64,000 nt of DNA, from the IMG/VR virus record IMGVR_UViG_3300036770_003657, positions 186,001 through 250,000 of that record; one strand, 5' to 3'. Positions within the stretch are counted from its first letter, which is position 1. The number at the start of each line of letters is the position of its first letter. The translations under genes and the position numbers were made by a program. Positions 5,373 to 27,809 of the stretch are shown here, in pieces. The notes beneath the pieces are model-generated. The model was not told the DNA's origin and ran no database searches. It saw only the letters and a list, made by a program, of their open reading frames with translations.

Positions 5373-6001
5373 GCACAAACTCTAGCAATTGCCTGATGCT
5401 CCAATTGAGTGCCATTAGCACTGCGTAGTTCAACATAGTGTATCCAACTACGCAAAGTACCATTCATGTATAACTTACTTTCCATAATACCCTCAGGCAA
5501 TACAGCACGAGCTTGTTCTTTAGCTATGCCATTATTGACAGCCCAAGTGTAGGCTTTTCTAGCGGCCTTAATGACTTCTTCTTGTTGTTGAATCCACTGT
5601 TCTCTGAGTACACTATGTTCAATGGTAGCATCGAGTTCAATACTGTTTTGTCTATTTTTGGTGTCCTGCAAGCGGGCTTCTCTAAATACGAACGAGAGGT
5701 CTTTAGTAGGGTCAGCGTATCGCTGGCTGAATTCTTGGAAACTAAAACTTCTGTGTCTGAGTATTTGTCGGGCAATGTCTCTTGTGGTTGTAATTTCGAG
5801 GCAGGCACTGACCATTTCCAGCGGGCTCCAGTGTTGGTGGTTAACCAAGTATCTGATGAGTCGTTGGCTTGTCTCCGTGTTGAGCTGATTGCTTGGATTG
5901 GAGACACGGGCGCAGAAAGCAACAAGGTCCTGCGCATCCTCGATACCGTGAGATCTAAATTCCTCAGTGGGTTGGGAGTAGGAGACAAGTTTAACATTCA
6001 T
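5327..6001 (-). CDS. thyX: Flavin-dependent thymidylate synthase
   Basis: HWSPLE and the ThyX motif RQILRHRSFSFQEFSQRY, plus EQARAVLP and TQLEH. Confidence 0.96.
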   Translation of the reverse strand: MNVKLVSYSQPTEEFRSHGIEDAQDLVAFCARVSNPSNQLNTETSQRLIRYLVNHQHWSPLEMVSACLEITTTRDIARQILRHRSFSFQEFSQRYADPTKDLSFVFREARLQDTKNRQNSIELDATIEHSVLREQWIQQQEEVIKAARKAYTWAVNNGIAKEQARAVLPEGIMESKLYMNGTLRSWIHYVELRSANGTQLEHQAIARVCAQVIAKVFPLVSDFR

Positions 6002-12688: not shown

Positions 12689-13360
12689 TTAGCCTAATGG
12701 GTTAGGATATGGATTTGGTCTAAGCCATTTTGCCTGACCCTTAGTAAAAGTGACCATACTGTTATGGAAGCTTACACTGCCAATGTCTCCAAAGTTTTTC
12801 ATAATGAAATCAGTTTCTGGAGTAATCATACCTTGCCAATGGTTTAGATTAACAATATCCACTAGCTTTTTACTAAACTCCATAAAGGTATGACCATGTA
12901 ATAGGCCATTGCCCCAATCCATATAGTAACTAGTATGAGTATCTTCTACCATATATACACCGCCTACACGAATTTTGGGCCATACAGTGAGCATGGTATC
13001 AATTTGATGTTTCATTTGATGACTACCATCATCTAAGAAAACGTCCACAGTGCCTAACTTGGGTAATACTTCAGTCCAAAAGTTGGGGTCACCTTGGTCA
13101 CCAATAAACAGTTCTACATTTTCAGCACGACGTTCCAATACTTTGGGATCAATGTCCATACCAATAATACGGGCCTTGTTACCAAAGTACTTACGCCACA
13201 TTTCTAAACTACCACCACCCTGTACACCTACTTCTACAAAGGTTAAGTCAGTATTTCTATAACCACTAAAGAAGTGTTCATACACTGGAAAGTATGGAAG
13301 GTACTTGTCACAGTGTAAGGTTAAATCATTAATAAAAATTTCCAGTAAACTCTTTTGCAT
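12689..13360 (-). CDS. Class I SAM-dependent methyltransferase (sugar O-methyltransferase-like)
   Basis: VEVGVQGGGS, GMDID, GDQ, LDDGSH and GGVYMVED; start M at 13360 is coupled to the queE stop. Confidence 0.82.
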   Translation of the reverse strand: MQKSLLEIFINDLTLHCDKYLPYFPVYEHFFSGYRNTDLTFVEVGVQGGGSLEMWRKYFGNKARIIGMDIDPKVLERRAENVELFIGDQGDPNFWTEVLPKLGTVDVFLDDGSHQMKHQIDTMLTVWPKIRVGGVYMVEDTHTSYYMDWGNGLLHGHTFMEFSKKLVDIVNLNHWQGMITPETDFIMKNFGDIGSVSFHNSMVTFTKGQAKWLRPNPYPNPLG

Positions 13361-14205
13361 TAGGTTCCCCATTCATTCTTGAATAATGGCACTTGTAGCC
13401 TATCACTATAGCGTACACCACATTGCATGGCCAGTTCAGCTACACGACGATTGTTCATACTATATACACTTTCCACACCACCTACTGGCATCAAATAGAC
13501 ATCACCATTAAATCCAGCTTTTCTATATTGTAGGCTAGCAACAAGAGCATCTTTAGCATCGTCCTCAGTGGCCACTACAAACTTCAAATATACATGACCG
13601 ACTTGTGCGTATTCACATACTACTTCAGGTAGGATAGCTTCTTCCCACTTTTCACCACTGCTAGGAAGTTTAGCACTTACACTAAAAGTAATTTCTCTGT
13701 CATCCCAGTCAGCCCATTCACCTAAATACTTTTTAAAATCAGCTGTAAGTTTTTGAGTACCATTAGTTTCAAAAGTTAATTGCTTCAAAGGCTGCATGAA
13801 CGCATGTTCTAATAGGTCAGGGTAACTGCGTTGCCAACCTAATAAAGGTTCACCACCAGTAATAACAAGATGTTCTCTAGTCCAGCGTTTAAATGGCAGT
13901 AAATCCATAATACTCTGTGCTATGCTGGCAGTGTCCAATACAGGACTAAAGTCCTTAAACCTTGGATCCCAACTAGCATAACTGTCACAGCCAGTATGTA
14001 CTAAGGGAAGATCCTTATAAGTTTTAAACTCTAGGATATGATCTGCGGCTTGGTCACGTTCTGTGCTGCGTAGACCACGTGCCATTCCAAATCCATCACA
14101 GGTAAAGTTACAGCCAAATGTGCGTAAGAACACACTGGGTACTCCCATAAACCTACCTTCACCCTGTAGGCTATAAAATAATTCACTTATCTTTAGTTTT
14201 GACAT
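13360..14205 (-). CDS. queE: 7-carboxy-7-deazaguanine synthase (radical SAM)
   Basis: ISELFYSLQGEG, FLRTFGCNFTC...CDS, ITGGEPL, FETNGT and LMP. Confidence 0.9.
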   Translation of the reverse strand: MSKLKISELFYSLQGEGRFMGVPSVFLRTFGCNFTCDGFGMARGLRSTERDQAADHILEFKTYKDLPLVHTGCDSYASWDPRFKDFSPVLDTASIAQSIMDLLPFKRWTREHLVITGGEPLLGWQRSYPDLLEHAFMQPLKQLTFETNGTQKLTADFKKYLGEWADWDDREITFSVSAKLPSSGEKWEEAILPEVVCEYAQVGHVYLKFVVATEDDAKDALVASLQYRKAGFNGDVYLMPVGGVESVYSMNNRRVAELAMQCGVRYSDRLQVPLFKNEWGT

Positions 14206-14960: not shown

Positions 14961-15174
14961 AGTAAAATTCCTTTTCTTTAAAATATGTTTCAAGTACCTC
15001 TAATTTATCCTTGTATTCTGCCATACAATGAATCTCTAGTTCCAAAGCCGCCATAATATCTGTATGTTCATGAATAGCTATTGGATTTGCCAACATTACT
15101 TCAACATTCATACGATGTTTATTAATGTTGCTATGAAAGTGTTGACTTAATGCGTTTAATAGTTCTGTTCTCAT
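14947..15174 (-). CDS. Hypothetical protein
   Basis: ATGA-coupled to folE. Confidence 0.55.
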   Translation of the reverse strand: MRTELLNALSQHFHSNINKHRMNVEVMLANPIAIHEHTDIMAALELEIHCMAEYKDKLEVLETYFKEKEFYYDTK

Positions 15175-15944
15175 CTTGGTGCAAAGTCCTGTTGTAGTTT
15201 AATATTATCAAAAAACTCTTTTTTAGTGCCATGGTCTACTTCAAAAGCACCTTTTAATACTGTAGTTTGTGTAAGACTACTATGTGCCATAATGCCTCTA
15301 TTCTCACAGCATCCATGAGTGGCCTGTATATAAACACCTACATTAGGACTACCTGTAGCCTTTTCAATTTCACGAGCAATTACATTACATAGTTCTTCCT
15401 GTAGAGTTCCTCTACGGGCACACCATTGTGCTATACGAGTATACTTACTTAGGCCTATTACACGACCATTAGGAATAATTCCTATATATGCTACGCCGTT
15501 TACAGGTTGATGATGATGACTACACATACTGCGTAATTCACTACGAACTACCAGCATACCCTTATAAGCATTTTCCCCCTCATTGGGAAAACTTGTAGCA
15601 TCTGGCCTTTCTTCATAACGACCACTCATAATCTCATAAACATACATCTTAGCCAGTCTACGTGCTGTACCTTGGCTGTTTGGATCATTGACTCGATCAA
15701 TTACTAAACTATCTAATACACCTTCGAACTTAGTGGTAAGTTCGTCAATGAGTAGTTCACGTTCATCTTCATTGATGTATTCACTAATATTATCACCAGC
15801 AAAGTACCTACCACCGCCTAGTTTAATACGATCTCTAATAACACGGCTTAAAGGCTTGCCAACAGGATCGTTAAAAATAGCACCCTCATATCCAGGATGA
15901 TATGGTGCTTCTTCTACAAGTTTATTATTCAATTCAATTTCCAT
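15171..15944 (-). CDS. folE: GTP cyclohydrolase I
   Basis: TARRLAKMY, SMCSHH, IGLSKYTR, LQEEL and HGCCENRG. Confidence 0.94.
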   Translation of the reverse strand: MEIELNNKLVEEAPYHPGYEGAIFNDPVGKPLSRVIRDRIKLGGGRYFAGDNISEYINEDERELLIDELTTKFEGVLDSLVIDRVNDPNSQGTARRLAKMYVYEIMSGRYEERPDATSFPNEGENAYKGMLVVRSELRSMCSHHHQPVNGVAYIGIIPNGRVIGLSKYTRIAQWCARRGTLQEELCNVIAREIEKATGSPNVGVYIQATHGCCENRGIMAHSSLTQTTVLKGAFEVDHGTKKEFFDNIKLQQDFAPR

Positions 15945-16444
15945 TATATAATTTTCTCCGCTACTACAGTAAAGCTATGATTTAAGTCTTTATCTCCATG
16001 TAGTATATTAACATATTTTTTATGTTGTAAATAGTCGTTAATTTGCTCAAAAGTTAGAGCATGGATATGTTTGGGATTATTCCAAGGACGCCAATATTGC
16101 TGGTCATAGTGTGGAAGATATAAAAATAGCACTCCATTCTTTTTTAATCGAGTGGTCCAATGATCTAGAGCAGTTACCCAGTTAGGTAAGTGTTCCAAAC
16201 AATGGCTACTAAAAATATAATCTACCTGACGGTCTGGTAAGTTATAGGCATCGTAACCATCATTATAATTTAAGTCTATGCCTTGAGCACCTGGAAAACA
16301 CCACTCTGGTCTATTACAACCAATATCAAATCCATCACCCTTACAAAAGCGTTGAGCAAAAGTCCAACAGAATTGACTACTAAATCCTTCAGCTTGAAAC
16401 TTAGGATAACGCCATGGGCCAAAATTAATAAATTCTATGCTCAC
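15944..16444 (-). CDS. Methyltransferase type 11-like protein
   Basis: DIGC, DYIFSSHCLEH and LKKNGVLFLYLP. Confidence 0.75.
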   Translation of the reverse strand: MSIEFINFGPWRYPKFQAEGFSSQFCWTFAQRFCKGDGFDIGCNRPEWCFPGAQGIDLNYNDGYDAYNLPDRQVDYIFSSHCLEHLPNWVTALDHWTTRLKKNGVLFLYLPHYDQQYWRPWNNPKHIHALTFEQINDYLQHKKYVNILHGDKDLNHSFTVVAEKII

Positions 16445-16845
16445 CAGTTTACACTCTCCACTATAGGTTGTTCTATTACTTTTTTATAGTTACCCTTTTC
16501 TGGGATAACGTGTCTTACACCGCCTCTGGGATCAGCCATATCACCTTTACGACGTGGTATCATATGTACGTGAGGATACATTACTGTTTGACCAGCAACC
16601 TCCCCAATGTTTTGACCAATGTTAAATCCGTCCCACTTTTCATTTTGGACTCCTTCATAGCCAAACTTGTATGCTCCTCTGTAGCATTCAAATAAAGCGT
16701 CCGGTGTTTGGCTGGTAGGCACAAATAGCAAATGCCCTTGGGTAACTGGGTACGCATCTCTGAAAACCCAGAAGTTACGGGTTCTGTATTCAATCTCTGT
16801 CCACGGTGCTGTTTTTTCATTAAGTGCCTTTTCTAAATCAGTCAT
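16441..16845 (-). CDS. HIT family nucleotide hydrolase
   Basis: DAYPVTQGHLLFVP and GFNIGQNIGEVAGQTVMYPHVHMIPRRKGD. Confidence 0.9.
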   Translation of the reverse strand: MTDLEKALNEKTAPWTEIEYRTRNFWVFRDAYPVTQGHLLFVPTSQTPDALFECYRGAYKFGYEGVQNEKWDGFNIGQNIGEVAGQTVMYPHVHMIPRRKGDMADPRGGVRHVIPEKGNYKKVIEQPIVESVNW

Positions 16846-17033
16846 GATAAATCCTTAAACATTTTTTTACGATTTGCTATACCTAAATGGTTGTCATATA
16901 TTTCCTTGGCACTTATCATCATGCAACTAGCCATCATAAGTAAGTCTTCTGTATTATCGCACATCATGACGGCTTTGTCAATAGGTTCGAACAGTTCTCT
17001 CATTCGTTTTAAATCTTGTTCTCTATCACGCAT
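16842..17033 (-). CDS. Hypothetical protein
   Basis: Likely start MRDREQ, overlapping the upstream stop. Confidence 0.5.
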   Translation of the reverse strand: MRDREQDLKRMRELFEPIDKAVMMCDNTEDLLMMASCMMISAKEIYDNHLGIANRKKMFKDLS

Positions 17034-17376
17034 CTTTAAGTTTCTTCCAAGTTCTATATTTTTCCAATTCCCGTATATAAGCATCATAGGCTTTTTTCAG
17101 TTTGGGAAATTCTTTTTCCAACTCTGGGTCACGCTCAGGTATCATTAATACTCTTTCAATAGTTTCCAATCTTTCTTCCAAGTCTCTACCGTTATGAACA
17201 ATTTTACCTTTAACTTCTAAACTAGCTGGGCTGTTATTAATTTTAATATGTTCGCCTAAACTATATCCACTGGCATTAGTAGTAGTATAAGTATAGCCAC
17301 TGGTGCTAGCACCGTTATTGGCAGCGATGTATACTTGATTAGGGTTGGAGTTTACGGGAAGCGAGGTATTGCTCAT
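17026..17376 (-). CDS. Hypothetical protein
   Basis: Low-complexity N-terminus and helical C-terminus. Confidence 0.55.
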   Translation of the reverse strand: MSNTSLPVNSNPNQVYIAANNGASTSGYTYTTTNASGYSLGEHIKINNSPASLEVKGKIVHNGRDLEERLETIERVLMIPERDPELEKEFPKLKKAYDAYIRELEKYRTWKKLKDA

Positions 17377-17824
17377 TAGGTATCCATTTATTCTTTACCA
17401 GGAATCCCCATTCTTTACGCTGTGGGCCTGGCATAAACAGCGTCCAACAAGTAATGTCTGGATCAAGTTCTATACGGTGATAACTACTGGCCTTACTAAA
17501 ACGAAAATGCCCTGCACCACGCCAATGTGCTATTTCGTTTACCTTACGACCTTGCTCATCAAACTGTGGGATCCATTCCCAATAGCCGCCTCTAAGTATA
17601 AAAGTAGCATAGGGCCAAGGATGATCGTGTACATCATCTGGATCACTCTTGAGGAATTTGTGTAGGAATATGTTAAATGGAAACCATTTACGATCTTTTA
17701 GGAAAACATAATAGCGTTCCAAATAAGGTTCCTCACTAACACGATCCAGTATGATACGCTTGCGTCCCATACGATCAAGTAAGTTTAAGAATTTATCTTT
17801 TAGGCGTTGGGTTATCATAGTCAT
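17339..17824 (-). CDS. Cupin-fold (dioxygenase-like) protein
   Basis: HKF..SD.DD.HDHPW, GGYWEW, YHRIEL and WTLF cupin-type motifs. Confidence 0.65.
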   Translation of the reverse strand: MTMITQRLKDKFLNLLDRMGRKRIILDRVSEEPYLERYYVFLKDRKWFPFNIFLHKFLKSDPDDVHDHPWPYATFILRGGYWEWIPQFDEQGRKVNEIAHWRGAGHFRFSKASSYHRIELDPDITCWTLFMPGPQRKEWGFLVKNKWIPNEQYLASRKLQP

Positions 17825-18299
17825 CCTTGACCAAGGTATAAACGGTTGATAAATTTTCTAATGCTTTCTTAATAGCAGGATACTTTTTGGCCATATCCTG
17901 CATCTTATACCAAGCAGGCCAAGTGTCAACAAATTCCTCTTGTTGTGGCCAATGTATCTTAGTATAATCTGTACCTGTACCTAAAGCACCAATCTGGGCT
18001 GTATTTAAAGTAGCCCACTGACTAGTATCTAAAGGCTGTATTGTTATTAGATCATTAAATTGAGCACCTTCAATTGGTGCATTATATGTATAAGTTGGTG
18101 TAGGCCCATTTAAATCAATACCACTCAAAGTAATACTACTCAAATCAATTGCTTGTATTTGATCTGTGGTCAATGCAGGTATTTGCGTATTCATATTAAT
18201 CCAACTATTATCGCTACCAGCACTAATAGTTAGAGTTTCTGTAGCCGTAAAATCACTTAAGGTTATTGTATAAGGGCTGTGCTGAGAAGAATCGTTCAC
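17793..18299 (-). CDS. Hypothetical protein
   Basis: T/S/I-rich ORF in operon. Confidence 0.55.
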   Translation of the reverse strand: MNDSSQHSPYTITLSDFTATETLTISAGSDNSWINMNTQIPALTTDQIQAIDLSSITLSGIDLNGPTPTYTYNAPIEGAQFNDLITIQPLDTSQWATLNTAQIGALGTGTDYTKIHWPQQEEFVDTWPAWYKMQDMAKKYPAIKKALENLSTVYTLVKDDYDNPTPKR

Positions 18300-19311
18300 T
18301 TAGTTGTTCCTTTTGTTGTTGTAATAGTTTCAACCTAGTACTGTAATTATCCATATGTTGTATAATAGTATAACATAATTTTTGACGATGTGTCAAATAA
18401 TACTCATAATTTTCAGTACATACTGATGGATATTTAAATGTATCAAAATACATTTCAGTATAACTTAGGCGATCTGGAACCAATGGGATAGCATCTAACA
18501 CCACACCCTCATAACAACTTATACCCAATGTTTCCTGTAGGTTAGCACTGAATACCATCTTAGCCTCACCTAATAATGTATGGTATTCGTGTTTAGTAAG
18601 ATTCAATTCTTGGCATACTACAAATTCGTATTGAGGCAAGTGTGTAGCAAGGTCTTTGAATATCTCTACCTGCTTCTCTGGTGTTATACGATGTGGGAAA
18701 AGAATTAGGTCACGCTTGGTTAATCCTTTATATGGAAGAAGCATAGTTTCCATATATTCCATTGGCCACCCAGATCGAATAACTTTGTTTTCATCGTAAT
18801 CAACTACATTATGTAATAAATTATGATCAAACATATTGATATGAAACTGTGTGGCAAAATAATTATGATCTATAGCATGAAAGAATGCTTTTTCGCTATG
18901 TCTCACCCACGGGGCATTACCAATAAGCCTGCCTAAAAAGTCTTGGGGATCATATGATCCAGCATGCCATAATGCGTGAATTCTTACAGGAATCTGTAAT
19001 AGTTCACTCATATATTTTAAGTTTATGATACCTGGGTGCCAAGCATCAGTAAAAATAAAATGGTCGCCAGGTGTGATGCGTCCCTCGCAAAACAATCTGC
19101 TAATTGTAGCGACTTGGTGAGACTTGTAGATATTAGTGCCGCCAAAATTAAGAAAGGCACCAGGAGTAGTGGCTTTAGGAATATCCTCTGGACCAACAAT
19201 AACTTCAACTTCATGTCCTAAACTCCGTAATTTTCTTGGTAGAGCACTTTTCCACTCGATGGTATATCGAGTGGAAACGCTTTCCAGATCAACCAGAAAT
19301 ATTTTGCTCAT
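18253..19311 (-). CDS. Glycosyltransferase (GT-B, GT4-like)
   Basis: FPHRITPEKQ and ETLGISCYE (ExxGxxxxE) motifs plus LVPDRLSY.E; likely start MSKIF at 19311. Confidence 0.8.
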   Translation of the reverse strand: MSKIFLVDLESVSTRYTIEWKSALPRKLRSLGHEVEVIVGPEDIPKATTPGAFLNFGGTNIYKSHQVATISRLFCEGRITPGDHFIFTDAWHPGIINLKYMSELLQIPVRIHALWHAGSYDPQDFLGRLIGNAPWVRHSEKAFFHAIDHNYFATQFHINMFDHNLLHNVVDYDENKVIRSGWPMEYMETMLLPYKGLTKRDLILFPHRITPEKQVEIFKDLATHLPQYEFVVCQELNLTKHEYHTLLGEAKMVFSANLQETLGISCYEGVVLDAIPLVPDRLSYTEMYFDTFKYPSVCTENYEYYLTHRQKLCYTIIQHMDNYSTRLKLLQQQKEQLSERFFSAQPLYNNLK

Positions 19312-19564: not shown

Positions 19565-19942
19565 TTAAGGTTTATATTCAATAATGCCGTCTGATTCACC
19601 ATCTTCTGAAACAGTTATTTCATAGTATCTCTCTCCGTACTTGGGTAATAAATGATTTTCTAAAATATCAGTGGCAATCATTTCACAACTTTTATGATTC
19701 ATATTGCCACCTTGGATGAACTCAGCCAGTGCCCATTTTACTAAAAAGAATTCTAACTCTCTATCTAAATGGTTAACACTGATCTTTACTTCTACTTTGA
19801 ACATATGTCTATGTTCATTTTCTAAAAACTTAATTCTGGGATCAATACTGCCAGCATTAGGATAATAGTGAAAACCTTCAAACTCGGTTCTCACTCTAAT
19901 ATATGTCATCTTGCTAGGCCTAACATCTTGTTTAATAATCAT
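19565..19942 (-). CDS. dpdL: QueD-paralogous T-fold protein, probable CDG decarboxylase (DpdL-like)
   Basis: FEGFH, LENEHRHMF (LxxxHRHxF instead of QueD CxxxHGH), SCEMIA and VSEDGE; sits in a dpdA/folE/queE cluster. The motif assignment is recalled from the literature and needs checking. Confidence 0.65.
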   Translation of the reverse strand: MIIKQDVRPSKMTYIRVRTEFEGFHYYPNAGSIDPRIKFLENEHRHMFKVEVKISVNHLDRELEFFLVKWALAEFIQGGNMNHKSCEMIATDILENHLLPKYGERYYEITVSEDGESDGIIEYKP

Positions 19943-20136
19943 CGTAAACCTTGTATTAGTAGTTCAATTTCTTGTTGGTTTAAAAATAGGTTGTAGGTAC
20001 TAGTATTAGTTACAAGACCTTCCTTAACTGTTTCTTGTGCAAATTCGATATTATATAGAGTTTTAGGATTATCACAAGCACGTTTGGTCATTCTAATCCT
20101 ATATTCTGGCATATTCTTAATTAATATTTGGCTCAT
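19939..20136 (-). CDS. Hypothetical protein
   Basis: ATGA-coupled ORF. Confidence 0.5.
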   Translation of the reverse strand: MSQILIKNMPEYRIRMTKRACDNPKTLYNIEFAQETVKEGLVTNTSTYNLFLNQQEIELLIQGLR

Positions 20137-20636
20137 ACTGGTGTATCTCCTTCGTATTCTTTCCAGTCTGTATATACCTCACGACTCATAAGATCGTGTA
20201 AGTAATGACACCATACTCCAGGGTTAGTGTCACCCCAAGTATTGTCGTCGATTTTTAATACTGCGTTATAGTTGTATAGTTTAATATATGGAATTTTTAC
20301 ACTGATCATAGGAATGAATCTATTACTCTCTGTAAAGCTCATTTCGTGAATTTCATCAGCATATTTTACATCAAAGTCAAGAGTGACCCAATAACCAATA
20401 TCTAATAAACCATTGATCATTTTACTCCAAGCACGCCAATCTTCAAGACTAACGGGTGTAAAACTTTGACTAGTGCCTAAATAGACGTGATCAAGGTTAT
20501 CTATTTTGCTAACTATTTCATCTACAGGTTTGACACCAACTACAAATAATGTTCTTTGGCCTTTCATTGGAGTATTTTCAACTTCAGTGCCAATAAAATA
20601 GTCTACTTGTTGTCTACCTTCTGTTCCTATGGCCAT
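20133..20636 (-). CDS. Hypothetical protein in the dpd cluster
   Basis: 167-aa globular-looking ORF (GTEVENT...TNPGVWC). Confidence 0.6.
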   Translation of the reverse strand: MAIGTEGRQQVDYFIGTEVENTPMKGQRTLFVVGVKPVDEIVSKIDNLDHVYLGTSQSFTPVSLEDWRAWSKMINGLLDIGYWVTLDFDVKYADEIHEMSFTESNRFIPMISVKIPYIKLYNYNAVLKIDDNTWGDTNPGVWCHYLHDLMSREVYTDWKEYEGDTPV

Positions 20637-21505
20637 ACTATATAACCTCTGCCGTAATTTGTTGGTCTATCAGCACCATCTTTGAAAGCCTGCTGCCACT
20701 CTGTAGTCCTATTATACGCACGAGTCCAGAACCTGTCAACATTTAATTGACCTTCCTTTATCCATTTTACAGCATATTCCATACTTTGGTGGAATGTTTT
20801 ACTACGTGGGCTTGGACGTACAGTTGTTACGCAATTCCAAAGTAAATGATCTTCAGTTTGTTTACTAGTAGCCTTACCAACAGCATTAACCAATATGCCG
20901 TTTGTAGCTATGGGATAAAGATCCTCTCCTTTAAAATCCATAATCACATCGTATTCACCATCATAGGTACTTTTATGATCCTCACCAAACAGATCAGTAT
21001 GATGATTACCCAATACATTAATATCAAAATTAAAATTACTAATCTTTAGTGTAGTATATGCCACATAACTTAAAAATCCAGTACCATTAATCAGTAGTCT
21101 CCCACCTTCTTTACGTTTGAGATGATAGTAATATTGGTTTACGCTGTTTACTCCACAGGCCACAGGTTCAATGATATAGCGTGGATGTGCTTCTGGCACC
21201 TGTACATACTCTCCACCTCTTACATTATAGAAGTCAGCATAAGCAGGTTCACCTCTGGTTGCTACAAGGTCACCAACTTGTACATCATATACAAACTTAC
21301 CTACTTCTATGACTTCACCTAAACCTTCGTGTCCCTGCATACCTAATGGTAATGGACCAAAGTTGCCCTGCATCATATCAATATCACTACGACATACGCC
21401 GGTCATAATGCTACGCACACGAATACCTGTACTTGGAGTAGGTTCTAATGCTATACGTGTTTCAAAAAACTCACCGTTGCCGGTAGTGGCTAATAGTTTA
21501 TTCAT
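20627..21505 (-). CDS. Zinc-dependent (MDR) alcohol/sugar dehydrogenase
   Basis: GVCRSD and GHEGLGEV catalytic-Zn motifs, EPVAC, Rossmann GTGFL. Confidence 0.85.
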   Translation of the reverse strand: MNKLLATTGNGEFFETRIALEPTPSTGIRVRSIMTGVCRSDIDMMQGNFGPLPLGMQGHEGLGEVIEVGKFVYDVQVGDLVATRGEPAYADFYNVRGGEYVQVPEAHPRYIIEPVACGVNSVNQYYYHLKRKEGGRLLINGTGFLSYVAYTTLKISNFNFDINVLGNHHTDLFGEDHKSTYDGEYDVIMDFKGEDLYPIATNGILVNAVGKATSKQTEDHLLWNCVTTVRPSPRSKTFHQSMEYAVKWIKEGQLNVDRFWTRAYNRTTEWQQAFKDGADRPTNYGRGYIVWP

Positions 21506-22395
21506 AATTTCTCGATTTTACTGTGTATCCAACTGTCCATAAAATATTGATTATCCCAAAACTCTTGGTTATTGATATTGTTTAGTGCTGTTTCAATCAT
21601 TGTTCTATAGGCACTTTCTGGACAAAGACCTAATGGAACAAAATGTTTATGTCCTGTAAATAATTGAAAGTGGATACCAATGTCAGCAGGGTTTAGGCTA
21701 CGCCAATCTGCTGTCAGTGTCCACATAGTTTCAGCACCAAGGAATCCTAGTCTACAATAGTCATCTACATTGTACACACCATCTGGATTGACCTTTCCAT
21801 AACTGGTATTTGTGAGGTCTGCCAAAGTCCAGCGTTGTTTTACATCTTTGCGGGTACGATCTGCGTCGTAATATTGTGGGTCCATAACGCACCAAATACT
21901 TAATAAGTGTGGCATAAGGTCACGGCTAACTCCACCCCAAGCAAGTTCACGGTTAGTAAACCAACTACCTGGACTTGGCACACGATCATCATTGATCCAA
22001 TTTACGTCAACTATAACACTGGCACTGGCCAAATGTTTTATTTCATCAATATTATCTCTATATTGATTATTCTTGACCATCATAATTCGTGTATTAGGGT
22101 GGCTTTCTACAAGTAAATCCCAAGCTTCACTGGTGGGTAATCCTGGTTTCTCAATAAACAATATACTAGTATGATCAACTACTTCAAGTGCTATAGTACC
22201 GTGTGTAAAGTTAGGTGTACAAATATGTGCTGTATCAAACTTATCATTGTCCTCTAGTGCTTGATTTAGACTAGTGTAATCAGCATGGCATAATGGGTTA
22301 GTATCTACAGTGACCACAGTATGTCCCATACTTTCCAATACATCCTTGTATAGTTGACCTATACCCATACCAATGACCAGACTAGTTTTGCTCAT
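21502..22395 (-). CDS. Gfo/Idh/MocA family oxidoreductase
   Basis: IGMGIG, ICTPNFTH, IEKP and GGVSRDLMPH. Confidence 0.85.
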   Translation of the reverse strand: MSKTSLVIGMGIGQLYKDVLESMGHTVVTVDTNPLCHADYTSLNQALEDNDKFDTAHICTPNFTHGTIALEVVDHTSILFIEKPGLPTSEAWDLLVESHPNTRIMMVKNNQYRDNIDEIKHLASASVIVDVNWINDDRVPSPGSWFTNRELAWGGVSRDLMPHLLSIWCVMDPQYYDADRTRKDVKQRWTLADLTNTSYGKVNPDGVYNVDDYCRLGFLGAETMWTLTADWRSLNPADIGIHFQLFTGHKHFVPLGLCPESAYRTMIETALNNINNQEFWDNQYFMDSWIHSKIEKL

Positions 22396-22636
22396 TTTTA
22401 CTGTCCTCGTATTTCATAAACATACGTGTCACAGGTTCCATTTCTTTAGCAAAATCATTAGGCATATGTATAGTCATCATTTCCAAATGATAATCAGTAG
22501 GGTAGTGCTTTAATAAATTCCTAGCACGTTCACGTACAACCTTTGGAACCTTTGGAGTCATAAGTGGACTAGTAAGTTCCATTAGAAACTTTCTAGTTTG
22601 AACAATATTACGATAGCGTTCGTCAGGCAGTGTCAT
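22382..22636 (-). CDS. BPSL0761-like small protein
   Basis: MTLPDER...FL.EL...VRERARNLLKHYP pattern. Confidence 0.55.
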   Translation of the reverse strand: MTLPDERYRNIVQTRKFLMELTSPLMTPKVPKVVRERARNLLKHYPTDYHLEMMTIHMPNDFAKEMEPVTRMFMKYEDSKNEQN

Positions 22637-24173
22637 CTTCTACTTCCATTTCTAAGGTTTCCAAGTTATCAATTTCGTCATCACTAAATTCACCTTCTTC
22701 TAATTGTACAGGATTATCCTCTACAAAGTCAAAGAATTTATTGAATAATGGTTTAAATGCTCTTGGACCACTATCCCCTCTAGTGCCAATAACTTGATCA
22801 TAAAATTTGCCAAAGTCATCTATAATTTCTAAAGCTACTTGTTTATTACTAGTAGAAAATACAGCATTCACTATATCTCTAAAATATGTTCTATCTATTT
22901 TTTCTTTAACTAACATAGCAGGACATATTCCAGCATCATATTGGCGGTTAGCTTCTTGTACAGCATTAATATGATGCCAAATATTGTGACACATCATTAT
23001 ACCGTAGCTAAAACTATCCCAACTTGTTTTATTACTTTGTCCAAACTTATTCAAGTCACCTGGGCCGTATACACATATGTCTCCAACTTGTATTTTATCC
23101 ATAGGTGGACTATTTTCAAATACTGGTAATATGCCATCCTGTACTACTGCGTCCTTATAGAACCTTTGATCATTTTTATATTTTTTGTCATCCAAACCAG
23201 CACTCATTCTATAGGTCCATTTTTTACGATCAATGGTTTCAGTTTGATAATAAATTTGACCATTAGCAGTGGCTAGGAAAGGACTGGCACAATCAAAAGT
23301 AATAGTAAAATTTGGATTATGATATTTTCTTACTGCTCTCTGTAGGTCAGTTAATAATACAGCCCATTCTAATTTACTGGTTCCAAGAAAGTGCATATAG
23401 TCTTGATAGCCTTTTTCTAAAAGACCATCAAACCTTAATGCTACAAGTCTCTTTAACACAAGGTGGATATCACACATATTTTGTCCACCCATAGCCCAAC
23501 CATTAAAATGTTCATTAGGATATTGTTTTGGGTCACTGTATTTTTTCATTTCCTGATACCAACGTTCTGCTTCGGTATGGTCTTCACCTTGTAGAACGTT
23601 CAGGAATTTACAATTACCATTACGATTACGTATAAAGTATTCGTTATTAATATGTGTGCCGGCTACAGCATCATCAAAGTCTTCAATTTTTGTTTTTTTA
23701 ACTGCTTCTTTAAAATTGCCAATCCAACTAGGAATATCTAAAATCATTCCATAGTCCATCAGCGTATCCATCCAAGTTAATACTTGATAACGCTTTTTAG
23801 CCGCTTTAGGACAATTTGGGTCTTTCCAATTGCCTTCCCATTTGCCCTTACCTATTTGGAAACCACCGCTATCACCAAGTACCCAACTTGTCTTACGATC
23901 ACGATTGCGAAACATATCCTCACGCCAACTTACTTTAGTCAAGTCTAAATTAGCGTGTCCAGCACTGTACAAACACCATTGATAATAAAACTCACCCTTT
24001 ACCGGGTCTAAAAAGTTCAAACTTTCCATACCATTACCAAAAGCTTTTGGTATACGAGCAGGATCTACATAGTTAAAATAACGCTGTTTACCTATAAAAG
24101 TAGCATAAAAGGTGCTAGTAGCTGGCAGAAACTTTGCATAATCTAGTTGGGTACTGGTTAAGTCTTTATTCAT
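22623..24173 (-). CDS. dpdA: TGT-family transglycosylase, DpdA-like (deazaguanine insertion into DNA)
   Basis: LGDSGGFQ, ILDIP, VLQG, GWAMGG, HFLG and TFDCASP TGT-fold motifs; no C-terminal Zn-binding CxCxxC of tRNA TGTs; next to clamp/PolB and folE/queE. Confidence 0.8.
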   Translation of the reverse strand: MNKDLTSTQLDYAKFLPATSTFYATFIGKQRYFNYVDPARIPKAFGNGMESLNFLDPVKGEFYYQWCLYSAGHANLDLTKVSWREDMFRNRDRKTSWVLGDSGGFQIGKGKWEGNWKDPNCPKAAKKRYQVLTWMDTLMDYGMILDIPSWIGNFKEAVKKTKIEDFDDAVAGTHINNEYFIRNRNGNCKFLNVLQGEDHTEAERWYQEMKKYSDPKQYPNEHFNGWAMGGQNMCDIHLVLKRLVALRFDGLLEKGYQDYMHFLGTSKLEWAVLLTDLQRAVRKYHNPNFTITFDCASPFLATANGQIYYQTETIDRKKWTYRMSAGLDDKKYKNDQRFYKDAVVQDGILPVFENSPPMDKIQVGDICVYGPGDLNKFGQSNKTSWDSFSYGIMMCHNIWHHINAVQEANRQYDAGICPAMLVKEKIDRTYFRDIVNAVFSTSNKQVALEIIDDFGKFYDQVIGTRGDSGPRAFKPLFNKFFDFVEDNPVQLEEGEFSDDEIDNLETLEMEVEDDTA

Positions 24174-24366
24174 TAACTTCTTTCAAATAGTCTATATGCT
24201 GATTAATCAGCAATATTTTAATGCTAGTAGGATCAACGGCATTATTTCTTTCTATACTTAAATGAACCAGTACATTTTGTTTGTGGAGAGTCACTAGTGT
24301 ATCATTAATTAATGATACACAGTCCTTCAACATTTTTACTTGTTCTTTAATTTGAGGATCCATCAT
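24166..24366 (-). CDS. Hypothetical protein
   Basis: ATGA-coupled ORF. Confidence 0.5.
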   Translation of the reverse strand: MMDPQIKEQVKMLKDCVSLINDTLVTLHKQNVLVHLSIERNNAVDPTSIKILLINQHIDYLKEVNE

Positions 24367-25097
24367 TTGCTCTGTGCTGGTAAGATATAGTTGTATTCGG
24401 CAATACCACTATCTACAGTAATCATCATAGCACCTTGGTCACTGATCTTCATAGTCATGTCACCGTCTAAGTTTAGAATACTAAGAACTTGTTGTACTGG
24501 CCAACTCCATTCTTGCTTAAGTTTACCTGTGACCTTAGGTTGAAAAACAAAACTACCTGCGTGAGTACTAGCATCTCCAAAGCTTACTACAAGGTCTTTA
24601 TTCTCCACTTTAACTTGGAAAATAGTTTCTTCATTATGAACTTGTGCCTGTAGCTTGAGCCGTTGTGTACTACTTAGGCTAGGTGTAAATTCAATATCCC
24701 AACTTGATCCTTTAAACTTTACACTTTTTAGTTTTTCATTAATGATTTGTGTACTCATAAACCTATAGTCATTAACATAGTCCCTATCTTCATTTTCAAA
24801 GTGTAAGCCTGTAGGAATATCTTCACCATTGCGATTACTGACCACTACGTCAATACTAGCGTTTTCTTTATACTCTGGATTTTTCAATAGTAAATTAAGT
24901 TTATCCAAGTTAGGCATACCAAATATACCTTGAAAATCACCTACTGGGTTATGTGTTTTAGCTGTTAAAATTACGCTACGATCTTCTGCCATACTTTCAA
25001 TAGTAGTATCTGTACCTTCACCTGTAATTTTTACTAAGGGTAAAAATCCTAAACTATGAGTATGTGTTACAATATCTGTTAAAATGTCTTTAATCAT
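24363..25097 (-). CDS. DNA polymerase sliding clamp (gp45/PCNA-like)
   Basis: 244-aa beta-rich protein immediately downstream of PolB, ending in the clamp-like ...GIAEYNYILPA. Confidence 0.7.
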   Translation of the reverse strand: MIKDILTDIVTHTHSLGFLPLVKITGEGTDTTIESMAEDRSVILTAKTHNPVGDFQGIFGMPNLDKLNLLLKNPEYKENASIDVVVSNRNGEDIPTGLHFENEDRDYVNDYRFMSTQIINEKLKSVKFKGSSWDIEFTPSLSSTQRLKLQAQVHNEETIFQVKVENKDLVVSFGDASTHAGSFVFQPKVTGKLKQEWSWPVQQVLSILNLDGDMTMKISDQGAMMITVDSGIAEYNYILPAQSK

Positions 25098-25114
25098 TGT
25101 TATCTCCTTCGTTA

Positions 25115-25143
25115 ATTATATTTAGAAAAATGTTATTTGTCAA
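25115..25143 (-). promoter_or_regulatory. Consensus sigma70 promoter (TTGACA-N17-TATAAT) upstream of the clamp/dpd operon
   Basis: tgtcaa at 25138-25143 and attata at 25115-25120. Confidence 0.85.
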
Positions 25144-27809
25144 GCTTCAAATTCAAATAGTTGATTGAATGTGTTCGATTCCTGCGTGTTTATAATCTTC
25201 CATTTTAGAACACCGATAAGATTTTCTAATTTACTATCTATAATGGTGTCTTCCATGGCAGCATGGTCAAAAGGTAACTCCTTAAACCATTGTGGCAATC
25301 TTAATTCATCTACAGGATATGCTACGCTGGTATAATTTAATGGATTAGGTTTTAGTTTACATACTACTACTTTCATACCGTCAACAATATTCATTGAATA
25401 TTTGTCACCATTCATACGTTTAAGAGTGTTCCAGTTAATAGCAGCTCTAACGTGTCCTGGCATATTGGCCTTACCCTGTTTGCGCTCTTTTTCCTCATAG
25501 TCAGTAATATTATTGGCACGACGTGGACTACCTTTTTCCCAACCAGGACGTGACTTAAAGTTTAGTCTAAATTCAGTAATATAGTCTAATACACTGGTTT
25601 CGTCATGTCCAGTAAGCACCATCTCTAGTACTTGACTTAAAAAGTCCTGTATGAATTCTGGAGTATCAGATCTTTTAAGATCCAGTCCCATGGCCTTGAT
25701 CTTGCCTGGTTTATCTTCTAAGTCCTGTCGTTTACCTTCTTTATCATAATACAGTACACTATAGCGTTTTTTGGTAATGAATAATCCTTTACTGGCCACT
25801 AGTTCACGTCCTGCCTTAATTACACTGCCTCTTGATTTAGGACAATGAAATGCTTGCATCATAAAGTCTGGGAATGAAGTATTCACTACATCTGCTACAC
25901 CATCATACAATTGTATAACAGTTTCTTTGGTCCAAGGTATGATACCTTTATCTATATCTTTTTTCAGCGTACGATAAGCACTAAAGTAGGCACTGTCAGT
26001 ATCACCATAAATTATGCTACGACCAACATGATCATAGTCACCAGTGATAACCTCATTTATCTTAGCAGCCATGTGCTTGGTAATTTGCCTGCCACTAAGG
26101 GTAGTACTTTGCCCAATACGCTTATCAAAAAACCTACACCCAGGATTAAGAATAGCGCCATAAAGACTGTTAAGGTTAATCTTCTTAACCAACTGTCGTT
26201 TATCCCAGTATTCTTCCTCAATTTTATTTCCAGCATTTATAGCCTCCTTAAGTTTGGCCTGCATTTCTTTACGTTCTTTGTACCAACGTTCAAGTAATCC
26301 TGGAATTACTCCTTCCTTCTCATAGGTGAATATTGTACCGTTAGCACTGAGCATCCATGGTTGATTGCTGTCAAAGATCAGTTTATATGCTTCAGCAGCA
26401 CTAACTATGTCATGACCACCTTCTTCCCAGTCAATAATAATTTCAGTACCAATCTCCTTATTCATTACTGCGTCATATTCCATGCTACCAAAACGACCTT
26501 CCCATGACCCAGCAAAGCTCTTACCCTTGGCCATTTGCTCGTTCATATAAGTATCAGTCATTGTTTGACGTAGTTGACCAACGATAGTTTCTGGACCCAT
26601 GTTAAGAGCACGAATAGCACTGGGATATAGACTGTTAATGTCCACACTGCCTATCCAATCGTGTATACCTTCTTTGGGATGAGCTACATAAGCACCAGCA
26701 GCACTACCATCATCACGTTCAGCTTTTCTAGTACGATTAGGAACTACTAGTCCTCTACGATGTGCTTCATTGATAATGGCCTGTTCTGTGACTGCCACAG
26801 CGCCCATTGTAGTTTGTAGCAGTACAGTGTTTTCATGGGCTAGTGTATTGGCTAGATCAATAAATCTTAGTTTACGATCTAGCTTATCTAATAAGGCACA
26901 GTCTTGACGATTGTATTCAATAAACTTGGCAAAGTCAGTATTGTAAAGTTGATCCAGTGTACCTTCATATACTGTCTTACGTTCTCCTACTTCCATCTCA
27001 CCAATAGCATCCAGTCTATAAGTATGTCTTTCTTCATAAGTATATCTGCGATAAAGTTCTAAACTATCAAGATGCACTCGACCAACTAGGTCATAGGTTG
27101 TAGCAGTTTTTCCAAACTTTTCATATTCTCTACGTTTGGGATAATGGTTCCATAAACAAAAGCGTCTTGTATCATCTTTACTCAATACTTTGGTAACACG
27201 ATTTACAGTGTAGGGGATATCATAGCCTTCACTGTTCCAACCTGTTAATACATCAGCATCTTCAATCAAGTTTAAAAAAGTATCCAACATATCAGCTTCA
27301 TTATCAAAGAGGTGTGTATTAGGAAAGTCTTTGACTAACTTTTCTGCCTCTTTAATATTTAGGCCTTTAGGTGGAATAGCCAGTGTGACCAATGTATCGA
27401 GCCATTGTAAATGTACACTGATGGCAGTGATGGGCATAAAAGCATCATCTGGACTAGCATATCCACGTTCTGGATCAAAGTCTACCTCAATGTCAAAAAA
27501 TGCTACCTGTAGTTTTGGTGCTTCAGCATTGAGATATTGATCACTTAAACAGACAAATATTTGGTTAATATCTGCTTCATAGATCTTTTTATTTGAGTTA
27601 ATTTTAAGTTCTTTGTGGAAATCCTTTTGTGTTTTACAAATAGTTCTACTTACTGGGGTTCCATATATACTGGTATATTTTCCTTTGGAGTCGTCCGAGT
27701 AAAATACGAACTTAGCAGGATATTCTTTAAAAACACGTTGACCCTTGCGGTCACGTTCCACGACCTTGACAATATCATTGTCCCGATCAAAATAGGCATC
27801 TACATACAT
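25140..27809 (-). CDS. polB: Family B DNA polymerase
   Basis: Exo FDIE, GWNSEGYD and YNRQD; pol DINSLYPS, KINLNSLYG, YGDTDS and KKRY. Confidence 0.97.
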   Translation of the reverse strand: MYVDAYFDRDNDIVKVVERDRKGQRVFKEYPAKFVFYSDDSKGKYTSIYGTPVSRTICKTQKDFHKELKINSNKKIYEADINQIFVCLSDQYLNAEAPKLQVAFFDIEVDFDPERGYASPDDAFMPITAISVHLQWLDTLVTLAIPPKGLNIKEAEKLVKDFPNTHLFDNEADMLDTFLNLIEDADVLTGWNSEGYDIPYTVNRVTKVLSKDDTRRFCLWNHYPKRREYEKFGKTATTYDLVGRVHLDSLELYRRYTYEERHTYRLDAIGEMEVGERKTVYEGTLDQLYNTDFAKFIEYNRQDCALLDKLDRKLRFIDLANTLAHENTVLLQTTMGAVAVTEQAIINEAHRRGLVVPNRTRKAERDDGSAAGAYVAHPKEGIHDWIGSVDINSLYPSAIRALNMGPETIVGQLRQTMTDTYMNEQMAKGKSFAGSWEGRFGSMEYDAVMNKEIGTEIIIDWEEGGHDIVSAAEAYKLIFDSNQPWMLSANGTIFTYEKEGVIPGLLERWYKERKEMQAKLKEAINAGNKIEEEYWDKRQLVKKINLNSLYGAILNPGCRFFDKRIGQSTTLSGRQITKHMAAKINEVITGDYDHVGRSIIYGDTDSAYFSAYRTLKKDIDKGIIPWTKETVIQLYDGVADVVNTSFPDFMMQAFHCPKSRGSVIKAGRELVASKGLFITKKRYSVLYYDKEGKRQDLEDKPGKIKAMGLDLKRSDTPEFIQDFLSQVLEMVLTGHDETSVLDYITEFRLNFKSRPGWEKGSPRRANNITDYEEKERKQGKANMPGHVRAAINWNTLKRMNGDKYSMNIVDGMKVVVCKLKPNPLNYTSVAYPVDELRLPQWFKELPFDHAAMEDTIIDSKLENLIGVLKWKIINTQESNTFNQLFEFEA

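What the first reader, a model, noticed from the sequence alone, without database searches (positions are those of the whole stretch)
19565..19942. QueD paralogue with an LxxxHRHxF motif and no canonical queD or queC in the window
Seen: a T-fold-like 125-aa protein with LENEHRHMF in place of the QueD CxxxHGH motif. Recalled from the literature (needs verification): this signature marks DpdL, the proposed CDG decarboxylase giving 7-deazaguanine. Inference: the inserted base may be DG or CDG rather than preQ0. Canonical QueD would then have to come from elsewhere in the genome or from the host, unless this protein substitutes for it.
Basis: partly seen in the sequence, partly recalled or inferred. 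Interest (0 to 1): 0.6.

Follow-up and report, generated by a model that had tools for sequence, protein, structure and literature searches.

The report
DpdL-type QueD paralogue in jumbo phage

Summary

The genome, a complete 399,796-bp virus record, supplies the expected partners. FolE and QueE lie in the window. A phage-type QueD lies 10.8 kb beyond the window's end. A divergent 516-aa TGT-fold protein is the only transglycosylase candidate. QueC is absent genome-wide. The pathway therefore stops at CDG or a derivative, not preQ0.

The "missing" QueD is simply outside the window. The decarboxylase activity itself remains unproven anywhere.

Beyond the finding: a GT-B glycosyltransferase and a 167-aa unknown protein are conserved DpdL neighbours. 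The same gene order occurs in Pseudomonas phage PA5oct, whose DNA carries a chemically undefined modified G.

Verdict: new member of a known kind, with moderate interest.

The parts
19565..19942 (-). DpdL-family T-fold protein (125 aa), the finding itself. Signature L40-x3-H44-R45-H46-x-F48. Zn-type His triad H25/H44/H46. Glu87 and Glu113.
18253..19311 (-). GT-B (group 1 / GT4-like) glycosyltransferase, 352 aa from Met37 of the 388-aa ORF. Conserved next to DpdL in ACP17, BUCT-ZZ01, PA5oct, Phosso and X1.
20133..20636 (-). 167-aa protein of unknown function. Homologue of an ACP17 132-aa ORF. Present in 70 of 121 DpdL loci.
22623..24173 (-). 516-aa divergent TGT-fold protein with DSGGFQ (Asp101). 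The only DpdA (DNA guanine transglycosylase) candidate in the genome.
15171..15944 (-). FolE, GTP cyclohydrolase I (PF01227, 132 bits)
13360..14205 (-). QueE-like radical-SAM CDG synthase (phrog_2076, E 4e-48; partial NCBIfam QueE matches)
20627..22395 (-). Two variable accessory oxidoreductases inside the cluster: ADH_N-type (292 aa) and GFO/IDH/MocA-type (297 aa). Present in 14 of 121 loci. Role unknown.
24363..27809 (-). Context: family-B DNA polymerase (889 aa) and a 244-aa protein. The 244-aa protein's Phosso homologue is annotated as a sliding clamp. The modification cluster sits directly downstream of them, as in PA5oct, Phosso and ACP17.

Best explanation
The gene encodes a DpdL-family enzyme, a QueD-derived T-fold protein. 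It works in a phage pathway FolE -> QueD -> QueE -> DpdL, coupled to a DNA guanine transglycosylase (here the divergent 516-aa TGT-fold protein). FolE, QueD and QueE make 7-carboxy-7-deazaguanine (CDG) from GTP. Because the genome has no QueC, CDG cannot become preQ0. DpdL keeps QueD's metal site (H25, H44, H46) and the Glu that anchors the 2-amino-4-oxo-pyrimidine ring (E113). It has lost QueD's catalytic Cys (Leu40) and its Asp-His dyad. Most likely it binds CDG and removes the 7-carboxylate by metal-assisted decarboxylation, giving 7-deazaguanine. The transglycosylase then exchanges this base for guanine in phage DNA after replication, protecting the DNA from restriction.

Shown here: family membership, fold, residue pattern, gene context and absence of QueC. 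Inferred: substrate, decarboxylation chemistry, the base inserted, and the protective role.
For: Homology: tblastn against 50,697 phage records hits phiST exactly on CGPG_00067 (30%, E 7e-8) and ACP17 DpdL (40%, E 6e-15), with the best hit in Synechococcus phage BUCT-ZZ01 (67%). PHROG 17812, E 4e-21.

Signature and invariants.

Residue mapping to E. coli QueD: H25=H16, L40=C27, H44/H46=H31/H33, E87=E86, E113=E110, with no D70-H71 equivalent. This matches the paper's description.

Context in the genome: FolE and QueE in the window. QueD outside it. The TGT-fold o516 is the only TGT-like gene. There is no QueC.

Context elsewhere: in 13 isolated DpdL phages QueE is present in 12/13, FolE in 12/13, QueD in 11/13, and QueC above cut-off in 1/13. 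In 121 viral loci DpdL sits with exactly one of three alternative TGT-like types in 96 loci.

Experiment in relatives: phiST DNA is 100% dDG. PA5oct, which has the same gene order, has restriction-resistant modified G.
Against: No DpdL has been shown to decarboxylate anything. Expression of phiST and ACP17 dpdL with their dpdA in E. coli gave no dDG.

dDG was measured only in phiST-type phages, which use DpdA3 and lack the glycosyltransferase. This window's type (o516 + GT + o167) has no chemically identified base.

The Arg of HRH is not universal: PA5oct and Ahp1 read HFH.

Faecalibacterium phage Roos has a DpdL-like gene without FolE, QueD or QueE.

Sequence-only links to QueD are weak. There is no Pfam or NCBIfam hit, and hhalign to phage QueDs gives 78% over the C-terminal half only.
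Confidence: 0.6

Rival explanations
1. DpdL does what is proposed, but dDG is not the end product in this lineage. The conserved GT-B glycosyltransferase, perhaps with o167 and the accessory oxidoreductases and HIT protein, adds a sugar to the deazaguanine, for instance at the now free, electron-rich C7. That would give a glycosylated hypermodified G.
For: A GT homologue lies within 10 kb of DpdL in 96 of 121 viral loci, and in none of the 7 DpdA3 (phiST-type, dDG-proven) loci. 18 of the 23 phage records with this GT family are DpdL carriers. It is directly adjacent to DpdL in ACP17, BUCT-ZZ01, PA5oct and Phosso. The genome has no ThyA-type hydroxymethylase that could supply a hydroxymethyl-pyrimidine target. 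PA5oct DNA behaves as 'hypermodified' towards END nucleases.
Against: No glycosylated 7-deazaguanine is reported in the papers found. DG has no hydroxyl or amino side chain, so C- or N-glycosylation would be needed. The GT could act on something other than DNA. The window's own GT has no Pfam hit, although its orthologues do.
Confidence: 0.2
2. The transglycosylase inserts CDG into DNA, and DpdL decarboxylates dCDG in place on the DNA rather than acting on the free base.
For: The paper itself considers that DpdA3 may insert CDG as a common precursor. VH7D DpdA2 can insert CDG at low efficiency. Closely related DpdLs (75-82% identical) are paired with different transglycosylase types, so DpdL does not depend on one DpdA type.
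Against: A T-fold active site is a closed pocket at subunit interfaces, suited to small ligands. The authors' model indicated action on the base. No DNA-binding feature is evident in a 125-aa single T-fold domain.
Confidence: 0.12
3. DpdL acts one step earlier, on the pterin CPH4 (QueD's product) or a related pterin. For example, it decarboxylates CPH4 before QueE contracts the ring, so that QueE yields DG directly.
For: DpdL descends from QueD and keeps its pterin/purine-anchoring Glu and metal site. CPH4 also carries the carboxylate. DpdL is often adjacent to QueE or FolE.
Against: From general knowledge, QueE chemistry uses the CPH4 carboxylate for binding. No evidence exists for QueE acting on a decarboxylated pterin. 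The idea is entirely untested.
Confidence: 0.1
4. The protein is a working QueD (CPH4 synthase) that replaces a missing queD.
For: Same fold and metal-binding His triad as QueD.
Against: There is no PF01242 or TIGR03367 match even at E 10. The catalytic Cys is Leu in all 30 aligned sequences, and QueD is inactive without that Cys (paper). The Asp-His segment is absent. A separate QueD is encoded in this genome and in 11 of 13 DpdL phages.
Confidence: 0.03

Closest known systems
DpdL of Cellulophaga phage phiST (CGPG_00067, AGH56765.1) and of Acidovorax phage ACP17 (ASD50405.1); proposed CDG decarboxylase, PMC10516641
   Same: Homologous over the full length (30% and 40% identity). Same LxxxHRHxF signature. 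Same conserved His and Glu set. Same size (115-127 aa). Same partners (FolE, QueD of the CxxxHGY subtype, QueE, a TGT-like protein) and the same absence of QueC.
   Different: phiST pairs DpdL with DpdA3, a MazG-like protein and an AAA_18 kinase-like protein (CGPG_00066), and has no glycosyltransferase. This genome pairs it with a 516-aa TGT-fold protein, a GT-B glycosyltransferase and o167, and has no CGPG_00066 homologue. ACP17 shares the GT and o167 but uses a different 424-aa DpdA type.
QueD, 6-carboxy-5,6,7,8-tetrahydropterin synthase (E. coli, PDB 4NTK; Pfam PF01242)
   Different: Catalytic Cys27 is Leu40. Gly32 is Arg45. The Asp70-His71 segment is missing. New invariant residues: H58, R61, E64, D114, E116. 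No Pfam or NCBIfam match.
Pseudomonas jumbo phage PA5oct cluster EST35_0316-0322 (and Sinorhizobium phage Phosso)
   Same: Same gene order in PA5oct: PolB, clamp-like protein, o516 homologue (32%, E 2e-80), GT (44%), DpdL, then QueE. [quoted passage not shown]
   Different: PA5oct's DpdL reads HFH instead of HRH, and its acidic SEDGE motif is altered. The chemical identity of its modified G is unknown. Phosso's o516 homologue lies about 170 kb from its DpdL.
DpdA / tRNA-guanine transglycosylase family (for the 516-aa neighbour)
   Different: About 130-250 aa longer than the phage DpdAs compared here. No PF01702 hit. No CxCxxC zinc motif. No significant BLASTP similarity to the ACP17-type DpdA or DpdA3.

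Membership tests
DpdL (PMC10516641) | Sequence homology to the type members phiST CGPG_00067 and ACP17 DpdL | tested here: met
   tblastn E 7e-8 (30%) and 6e-15 (40%) in a 2.3-Gb database. The phiST hit lies on CGPG_00067. Same clade as BUCT-ZZ01, support 100/96.
DpdL (PMC10516641) | Signature LxxxHRHxF in place of QueD's CxxxHGH | tested here: met
   L40-ENE-H44-R45-H46-M-F48. L, H, R, H and F are invariant in the 30-sequence alignment. The motif aligns to E. coli C27-GRL-H31-G-H33-S-F35.
DpdL (PMC10516641) | QueD-like T-fold | tested here: met
DpdL (PMC10516641) | Three His and two Glu shared with QueD; fourth His displaced | tested here: met
   H25, H44, H46, E87 and E113 align to QueD H16, H31, H33, E86 and E110. 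Invariant H58 has no counterpart at QueD H71.
DpdL (PMC10516641) | Genome encodes DpdA, FolE, QueD and QueE but not QueC | tested here: met
   FolE and QueE. QueD at C1:260773-261249. TGT-fold o516. No QueC: only a 22-bit partial PP-loop match, E 0.86 against E. coli QueC. Record rated 100% complete.
DpdL (PMC10516641) | CDG decarboxylase activity, or dDG in virion DNA | not testable with these tools
   Unproven even for the type members: the heterologous test was negative.
QueD / PTPS-I (EC 4.1.2.50) | Match to PF01242 / TIGR03367 | tested here: not met
   No Pfam or NCBIfam hit at E up to 10.
QueD / PTPS-I (EC 4.1.2.50) | Catalytic Cys of CxxxHGH and the Asp-His dyad | tested here: not met
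   Leu40 replaces the Cys in every family member. The D70-H71 segment is absent.
DpdA / TGT (for the 516-aa neighbour) | TGT (beta/alpha)8 fold with catalytic Asp in DSGGxQ | tested here: met
DpdA / TGT (for the 516-aa neighbour) | Pfam PF01702 match and TGT zinc motif (CxCxxC...H) | tested here: not met
   No PF01702 hit by hmmscan or by six-frame genome search at E 10. No CxCxxC motif; only C367, H396 and H401 are conserved.
DpdA / TGT (for the 516-aa neighbour) | Membership of a named subfamily (DpdA1-4) | tested here: inconclusive
   BLASTP E 0.06-0.9 to the ACP17-type DpdA and phiST DpdA3. The only weak sequence link is a 'TGT domain' protein of Vibrio phage GR7B, E 2e-5. DpdA1, DpdA2 and DpdA4 references were not compared, and the paper's supplementary table is not held.

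The most novel reading that the evidence does not exclude
This window, PA5oct, Phosso and many uncultivated jumbo phages share a distinct four-part module: DpdL, a GT-B glycosyltransferase, o167 and an enlarged zinc-motif-less TGT-fold protein. That TGT-fold protein would be a further DpdA subfamily. The module's product would not be plain dDG but a glycosylated (or otherwise extended) 7-deazaguanine, which would be the chemically undefined modified G of PA5oct. On this reading, DpdL's decarboxylation frees C7 for the glycosyltransferase.
Probability: 0.2. Interest if true: 0.75.

Novelty: new member of a known kind. Interest (0 to 1): 0.4.

Why it matters
7-Deazaguanine DNA modifications let phages evade restriction, and dDG can replace all guanines. 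DpdL is the only proposed enzyme for making DG, and it is still unvalidated.

This work shows the family is large: 1457 unnamed homologues, none recognised by Pfam or NCBIfam. The family is tightly tied to FolE, QueD and QueE without QueC.

It also occurs in at least three module types with different transglycosylases. One type, which includes the cultivable phages PA5oct, ACP17 and Phosso, always carries a glycosyltransferase. That gives concrete, testable systems for settling both DpdL's activity and the identity of PA5oct's modified G.

Tried and rejected
- Pfam and NCBIfam scans of the protein gave nothing.
- phmmer against PDB sequences gave only spurious Merlin hits, E 0.25.
- The DpdL profile against PDB gave only spurious bacterioferritin hits, E about 0.1.
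- hhalign of the DpdL profile against phage QueDs reached only 78% over the C-terminal half, and only 12% against the single E. coli QueD sequence, although that alignment is full-length and motif-consistent. The fold comparison was needed to settle the relationship.
- A scan of viral contigs with phiST DpdL found no relatives.
- The PF06508 hit at C1:308995-309234 was considered as a QueC and rejected. It covers only model positions 2-77 of 210, PP-loop/TilS models match at similar scores (26.5 and 26.3 bits, both below their cut-offs), and it scores E 0.86 against E. coli QueC.
- A BUCT-ZZ01-type phosphoribosyltransferase is present in 36 of 121 loci but has no homologue in this genome.
- The phiST AAA_18 partner CGPG_00066 has no homologue in this genome.
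- The o516 profile against PDB sequences gave nothing useful.
- The paper's supplementary tables are not held, so I could not check whether PA5oct-type proteins were already listed there.
- The large representative-protein search, the read-mapping tools and the complex prediction were not used. No claim here rests on them.

Full report
OBSERVATION. Window 19565..19942 holds a 125-aa ORF on the minus strand. The plus-strand reading is broken by many stops. LENEHRHMF occupies residues 40-48. The ATG overlaps the stop codon of the upstream 65-aa ORF (ATGA). The next ORF downstream has an AAGGAAG ribosome-binding site. All genes from 13.3 to 27.8 kb run on the same strand. The window is bases 186001-250000 of a single 399,796-bp virus record rated 100% complete, that is, a jumbo phage.

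IS IT A REAL, CONSERVED GENE? Yes. The word-index search found 1457 homologues, many on contigs of 100-355 kb, none with a name or a Pfam domain. A scan of viral contigs found 206 relatives. A 30-sequence alignment spanning 31-85% identity has 17 invariant positions: G23, H25, A30, L40, H44, R45, H46, F48, H58, R61, E64, F65, S85, E87, E113, D114 and E116. Pfam and NCBIfam do not recognise the protein. It belongs to PHROG 17812, function unknown.

IS IT DpdL? The only paper on DpdL (PMC10516641) defines it as phiST CGPG_00067. It describes a QueD paralogue in which CxxxHGH became LxxxHRHxF. It shares three His and two Glu with QueD and has a displaced fourth His. It was found in phages with DpdA, FolE, QueD and QueE but no QueC.
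- The window protein hits phiST exactly on CGPG_00067 (30%, E 7e-8) and ACP17's DpdL (40%, E 6e-15). Its closest isolate relative is Synechococcus phage BUCT-ZZ01 (67%).
- In a maximum-likelihood tree it lies in a 100/96-supported clade with BUCT-ZZ01 and the metagenomic relatives.
- The AlphaFold2 model (pLDDT 91.5, pTM 0.81) has the beta-beta-alpha-alpha-beta-beta T-fold layout.
- Adding E. coli QueD to the family alignment maps H25=H16, L40=C27, H44=H31, R45=G32, H46=H33, F48=F35, E87=E86 and E113=E110. DpdL has nothing at the D70-H71 position.
- Every sequence-testable defining feature of DpdL is therefore met. Two defining features of QueD itself (catalytic Cys, Asp-His dyad) are not met.

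THE REST OF THE PATHWAY.
- In the window: QueE (13360-14205; phrog_2076, E 4e-48) and FolE (15171-15944; PF01227, 132 bits).
- QueD is not in the window but is in the genome: a 158-aa ORF at C1:260773-261249, 10.8 kb past the window's end. It scores PF01242 56 bits and phrog_2389 E 2e-38, and is 66% identical to ACP17 QueD.
- This QueD reads HCxxxHGY rather than CxxxHGH, as do the QueDs of phiST, ACP17, BUCT-ZZ01, PA5oct, Phosso, BCSR5, X1 and MA9V-3. It is the usual partner of DpdL, not an oddity of this genome.
- QueC is absent. The single PF06508 hit (22-23 bits, model positions 2-77 of 210) is a 320-aa generic PP-loop ATPase. PP-loop and TilS models match it at similar scores, it scores E 0.86 against E. 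coli QueC, and tblastn with E. coli QueC finds nothing in the genome.
- No other TGT-like gene exists in the genome. The 516-aa protein lacks the TGT zinc motif, and it shows no significant BLASTP similarity to the ACP17-type DpdA or DpdA3.

CO-OCCURRENCE ELSEWHERE.
- In 121 viral-contig loci with a DpdL homologue (plus or minus 10 kb, many truncated), 96 carry exactly one of three alternative TGT-like proteins: o516 type 66, ACP17 type 23, DpdA3 7. No locus carries two. QueE is present in 79 and FolE in 64.
- Whole-record scans of 13 isolated DpdL phages from ten host genera give QueE 12/13, FolE 12/13, QueD 11/13, and QueC above cut-off 1/13 (a partial, divergent match in Vibrio phage D479).
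- The one record lacking everything is the 54-kb Faecalibacterium phage Roos.
- The transglycosylase type switches repeatedly along the DpdL tree, even between DpdLs about 80% identical.

MECHANISM.
- Shown: an intact QueD-type metal site and ring-anchoring Glu; loss of QueD's catalytic residues; new invariant Arg, His and acidic residues; a pathway that makes CDG and cannot make preQ0.
- Inferred, following the paper: DpdL binds CDG and decarboxylates it to 7-deazaguanine. The TGT-fold protein then exchanges this base for guanine in DNA.
- Support from relatives: phiST DNA is fully dDG. PA5oct has the same order (PolB, clamp-like protein, o516 homologue, GT, DpdL, QueE). Its DNA resists G-containing restriction sites, and a nuclease that senses modified G targets the phage.
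- Against: the only functional test of DpdL was negative. dDG has been measured only in the DpdA3 type.

- A GT-B glycosyltransferase sits at 18253-19311. The atlas places it in GT family 1. The BUCT-ZZ01 orthologue passes Pfam's Glycos_transf_1 and Glyco_trans_1_4 cut-offs.
- It lies next to DpdL here and in ACP17, BUCT-ZZ01, PA5oct and Phosso, and in the same cluster in X1. It is present in 96 of 121 loci but in none of the DpdA3 loci. 18 of the 23 phage records with this GT are DpdL carriers.
- The genome has ThyX but no ThyA-type hydroxymethylase, so no hydroxymethyl-pyrimidine target is apparent.
- In the DpdA3 lineage, DpdL is instead linked to an AAA_18 kinase-like protein (phiST CGPG_00066). 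In five viral contigs the two are fused into one 305-aa protein. This genome has no such kinase.
- These lineage-specific partners may be the 'other unknown enzymes' invoked to explain the failed reconstitution. They also leave open that the final base in this lineage is not plain dDG.

VERDICT. The QueD question is answered: the gene is encoded elsewhere in the genome. This is a new member of a known but biochemically unvalidated family. Family membership is about 0.93 likely; the decarboxylase function is about 0.5-0.6 likely. Interest is moderate (0.4). It would be higher if the glycosyltransferase-linked module proves to make a new base.

Noticed in passing
L122:8794-9711 (+); also L123-L126 (viral contigs IMGVR_UViG_3300045988_*): DpdL is fused to a C-terminal AAA_18 nucleoside/nucleotide-kinase-like P-loop domain homologous to phiST CGPG_00066 (29%, E 1.5e-15). 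Chryseobacterium phage MA9V-3 also has a separate CGPG_00066 homologue next to DpdL and DpdA3. The 2023 paper reported no homologues of CGPG_00066 in other deazaguanine phages.
   Followed up: partly
window 18253-19311 (-): A GT-B glycosyltransferase is conserved beside DpdL across Acidovorax, Synechococcus, Pseudomonas, Sinorhizobium, Xanthomonas and Burkholderia phages. It is absent from DpdA3/phiST-type loci. Its substrate is unknown.
   Followed up: partly
window 20133-20636 (-): A 167-aa protein with no match in Pfam, PHROGs or NCBIfam. It is homologous to a 132-aa ACP17 ORF and present in 70 of 121 DpdL loci.
   Followed up: partly
genome C1:260773-261249 (-), i.e. L003:1462-1938; outside the window: The genome's QueD belongs to a phage subtype reading HCxxxHGY, with an invariant Gln where E. 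coli QueD has its first zinc-binding His. Two of the three canonical zinc ligands are therefore replaced. Nine of eleven QueDs in DpdL phages are of this subtype.
   Followed up: partly
L129:7986-8363 (PA5oct), L136:5983-6375 (Aeromonas phage Ahp1): These DpdL homologues read HFH instead of HRH, and the acidic SEDGE motif is altered (AEDNI in PA5oct, SEEGI in Ahp1). The Arg of the published signature is therefore not universal.
   Followed up: no
L130:8022-8330 (Faecalibacterium phage Roos, 54 kb): A DpdL-like gene in a small phage with no FolE, QueD, QueE or QueC anywhere in the record. It either depends on host CDG or has another role.
   Followed up: partly
L148 (Vibrio phage D479, record 153872-154066): A divergent 224-aa QueC-like ORF with a CGKCAKC zinc motif but a degenerate PP-loop coexists with DpdL. 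This record has no Pfam-detectable QueD.
   Followed up: no
L132:5245-6396 (Vibrio phage Bakedbeans gp176, 383 aa); L137:5458-6339 (MA9V-3, 293 aa): The annotated genes carry the DpdL domain at the C-terminus of longer proteins. The N-terminal parts have no Pfam match. These could be further fusions or mis-called starts.
   Followed up: partly
window 15944-17824 and 20627-22395 (-): Variable accessory genes are interleaved in the cluster: a SAM methyltransferase (166 aa), a HIT-family protein (134 aa), a cupin matching PHROG 'cysteine dioxygenase' (161 aa), an ADH_N-type oxidoreductase and a GFO/IDH/MocA oxidoreductase. Across the 121 loci they occur in 2, 13, 37, 14 and 14 loci respectively.
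   Followed up: partly
window 22623-24173 (-): The TGT-fold protein family (about 480-600 aa) is unnamed in Pfam, PHROGs and NCBIfam, and lacks the TGT zinc motif. Full-length isolate homologues occur only in PA5oct-like phages, Phosso and Vibrio phage 2.275.O.
   Followed up: partly
window 17793-18299 (-) and window 5348-5941 (-): An ALTTAQ-repeat protein (PF20080) lies between the cupin and the glycosyltransferase. A ThyX flavin-dependent thymidylate synthase lies upstream in the window.
   Followed up: no
genome C1:308446-309408 (-), L004:952-1914: A 320-aa PP-loop ATPase of unclear function (TilS-N / ATP_bind_3-like), followed by a 264-aa ORF rich in conserved His motifs.
   Followed up: partly
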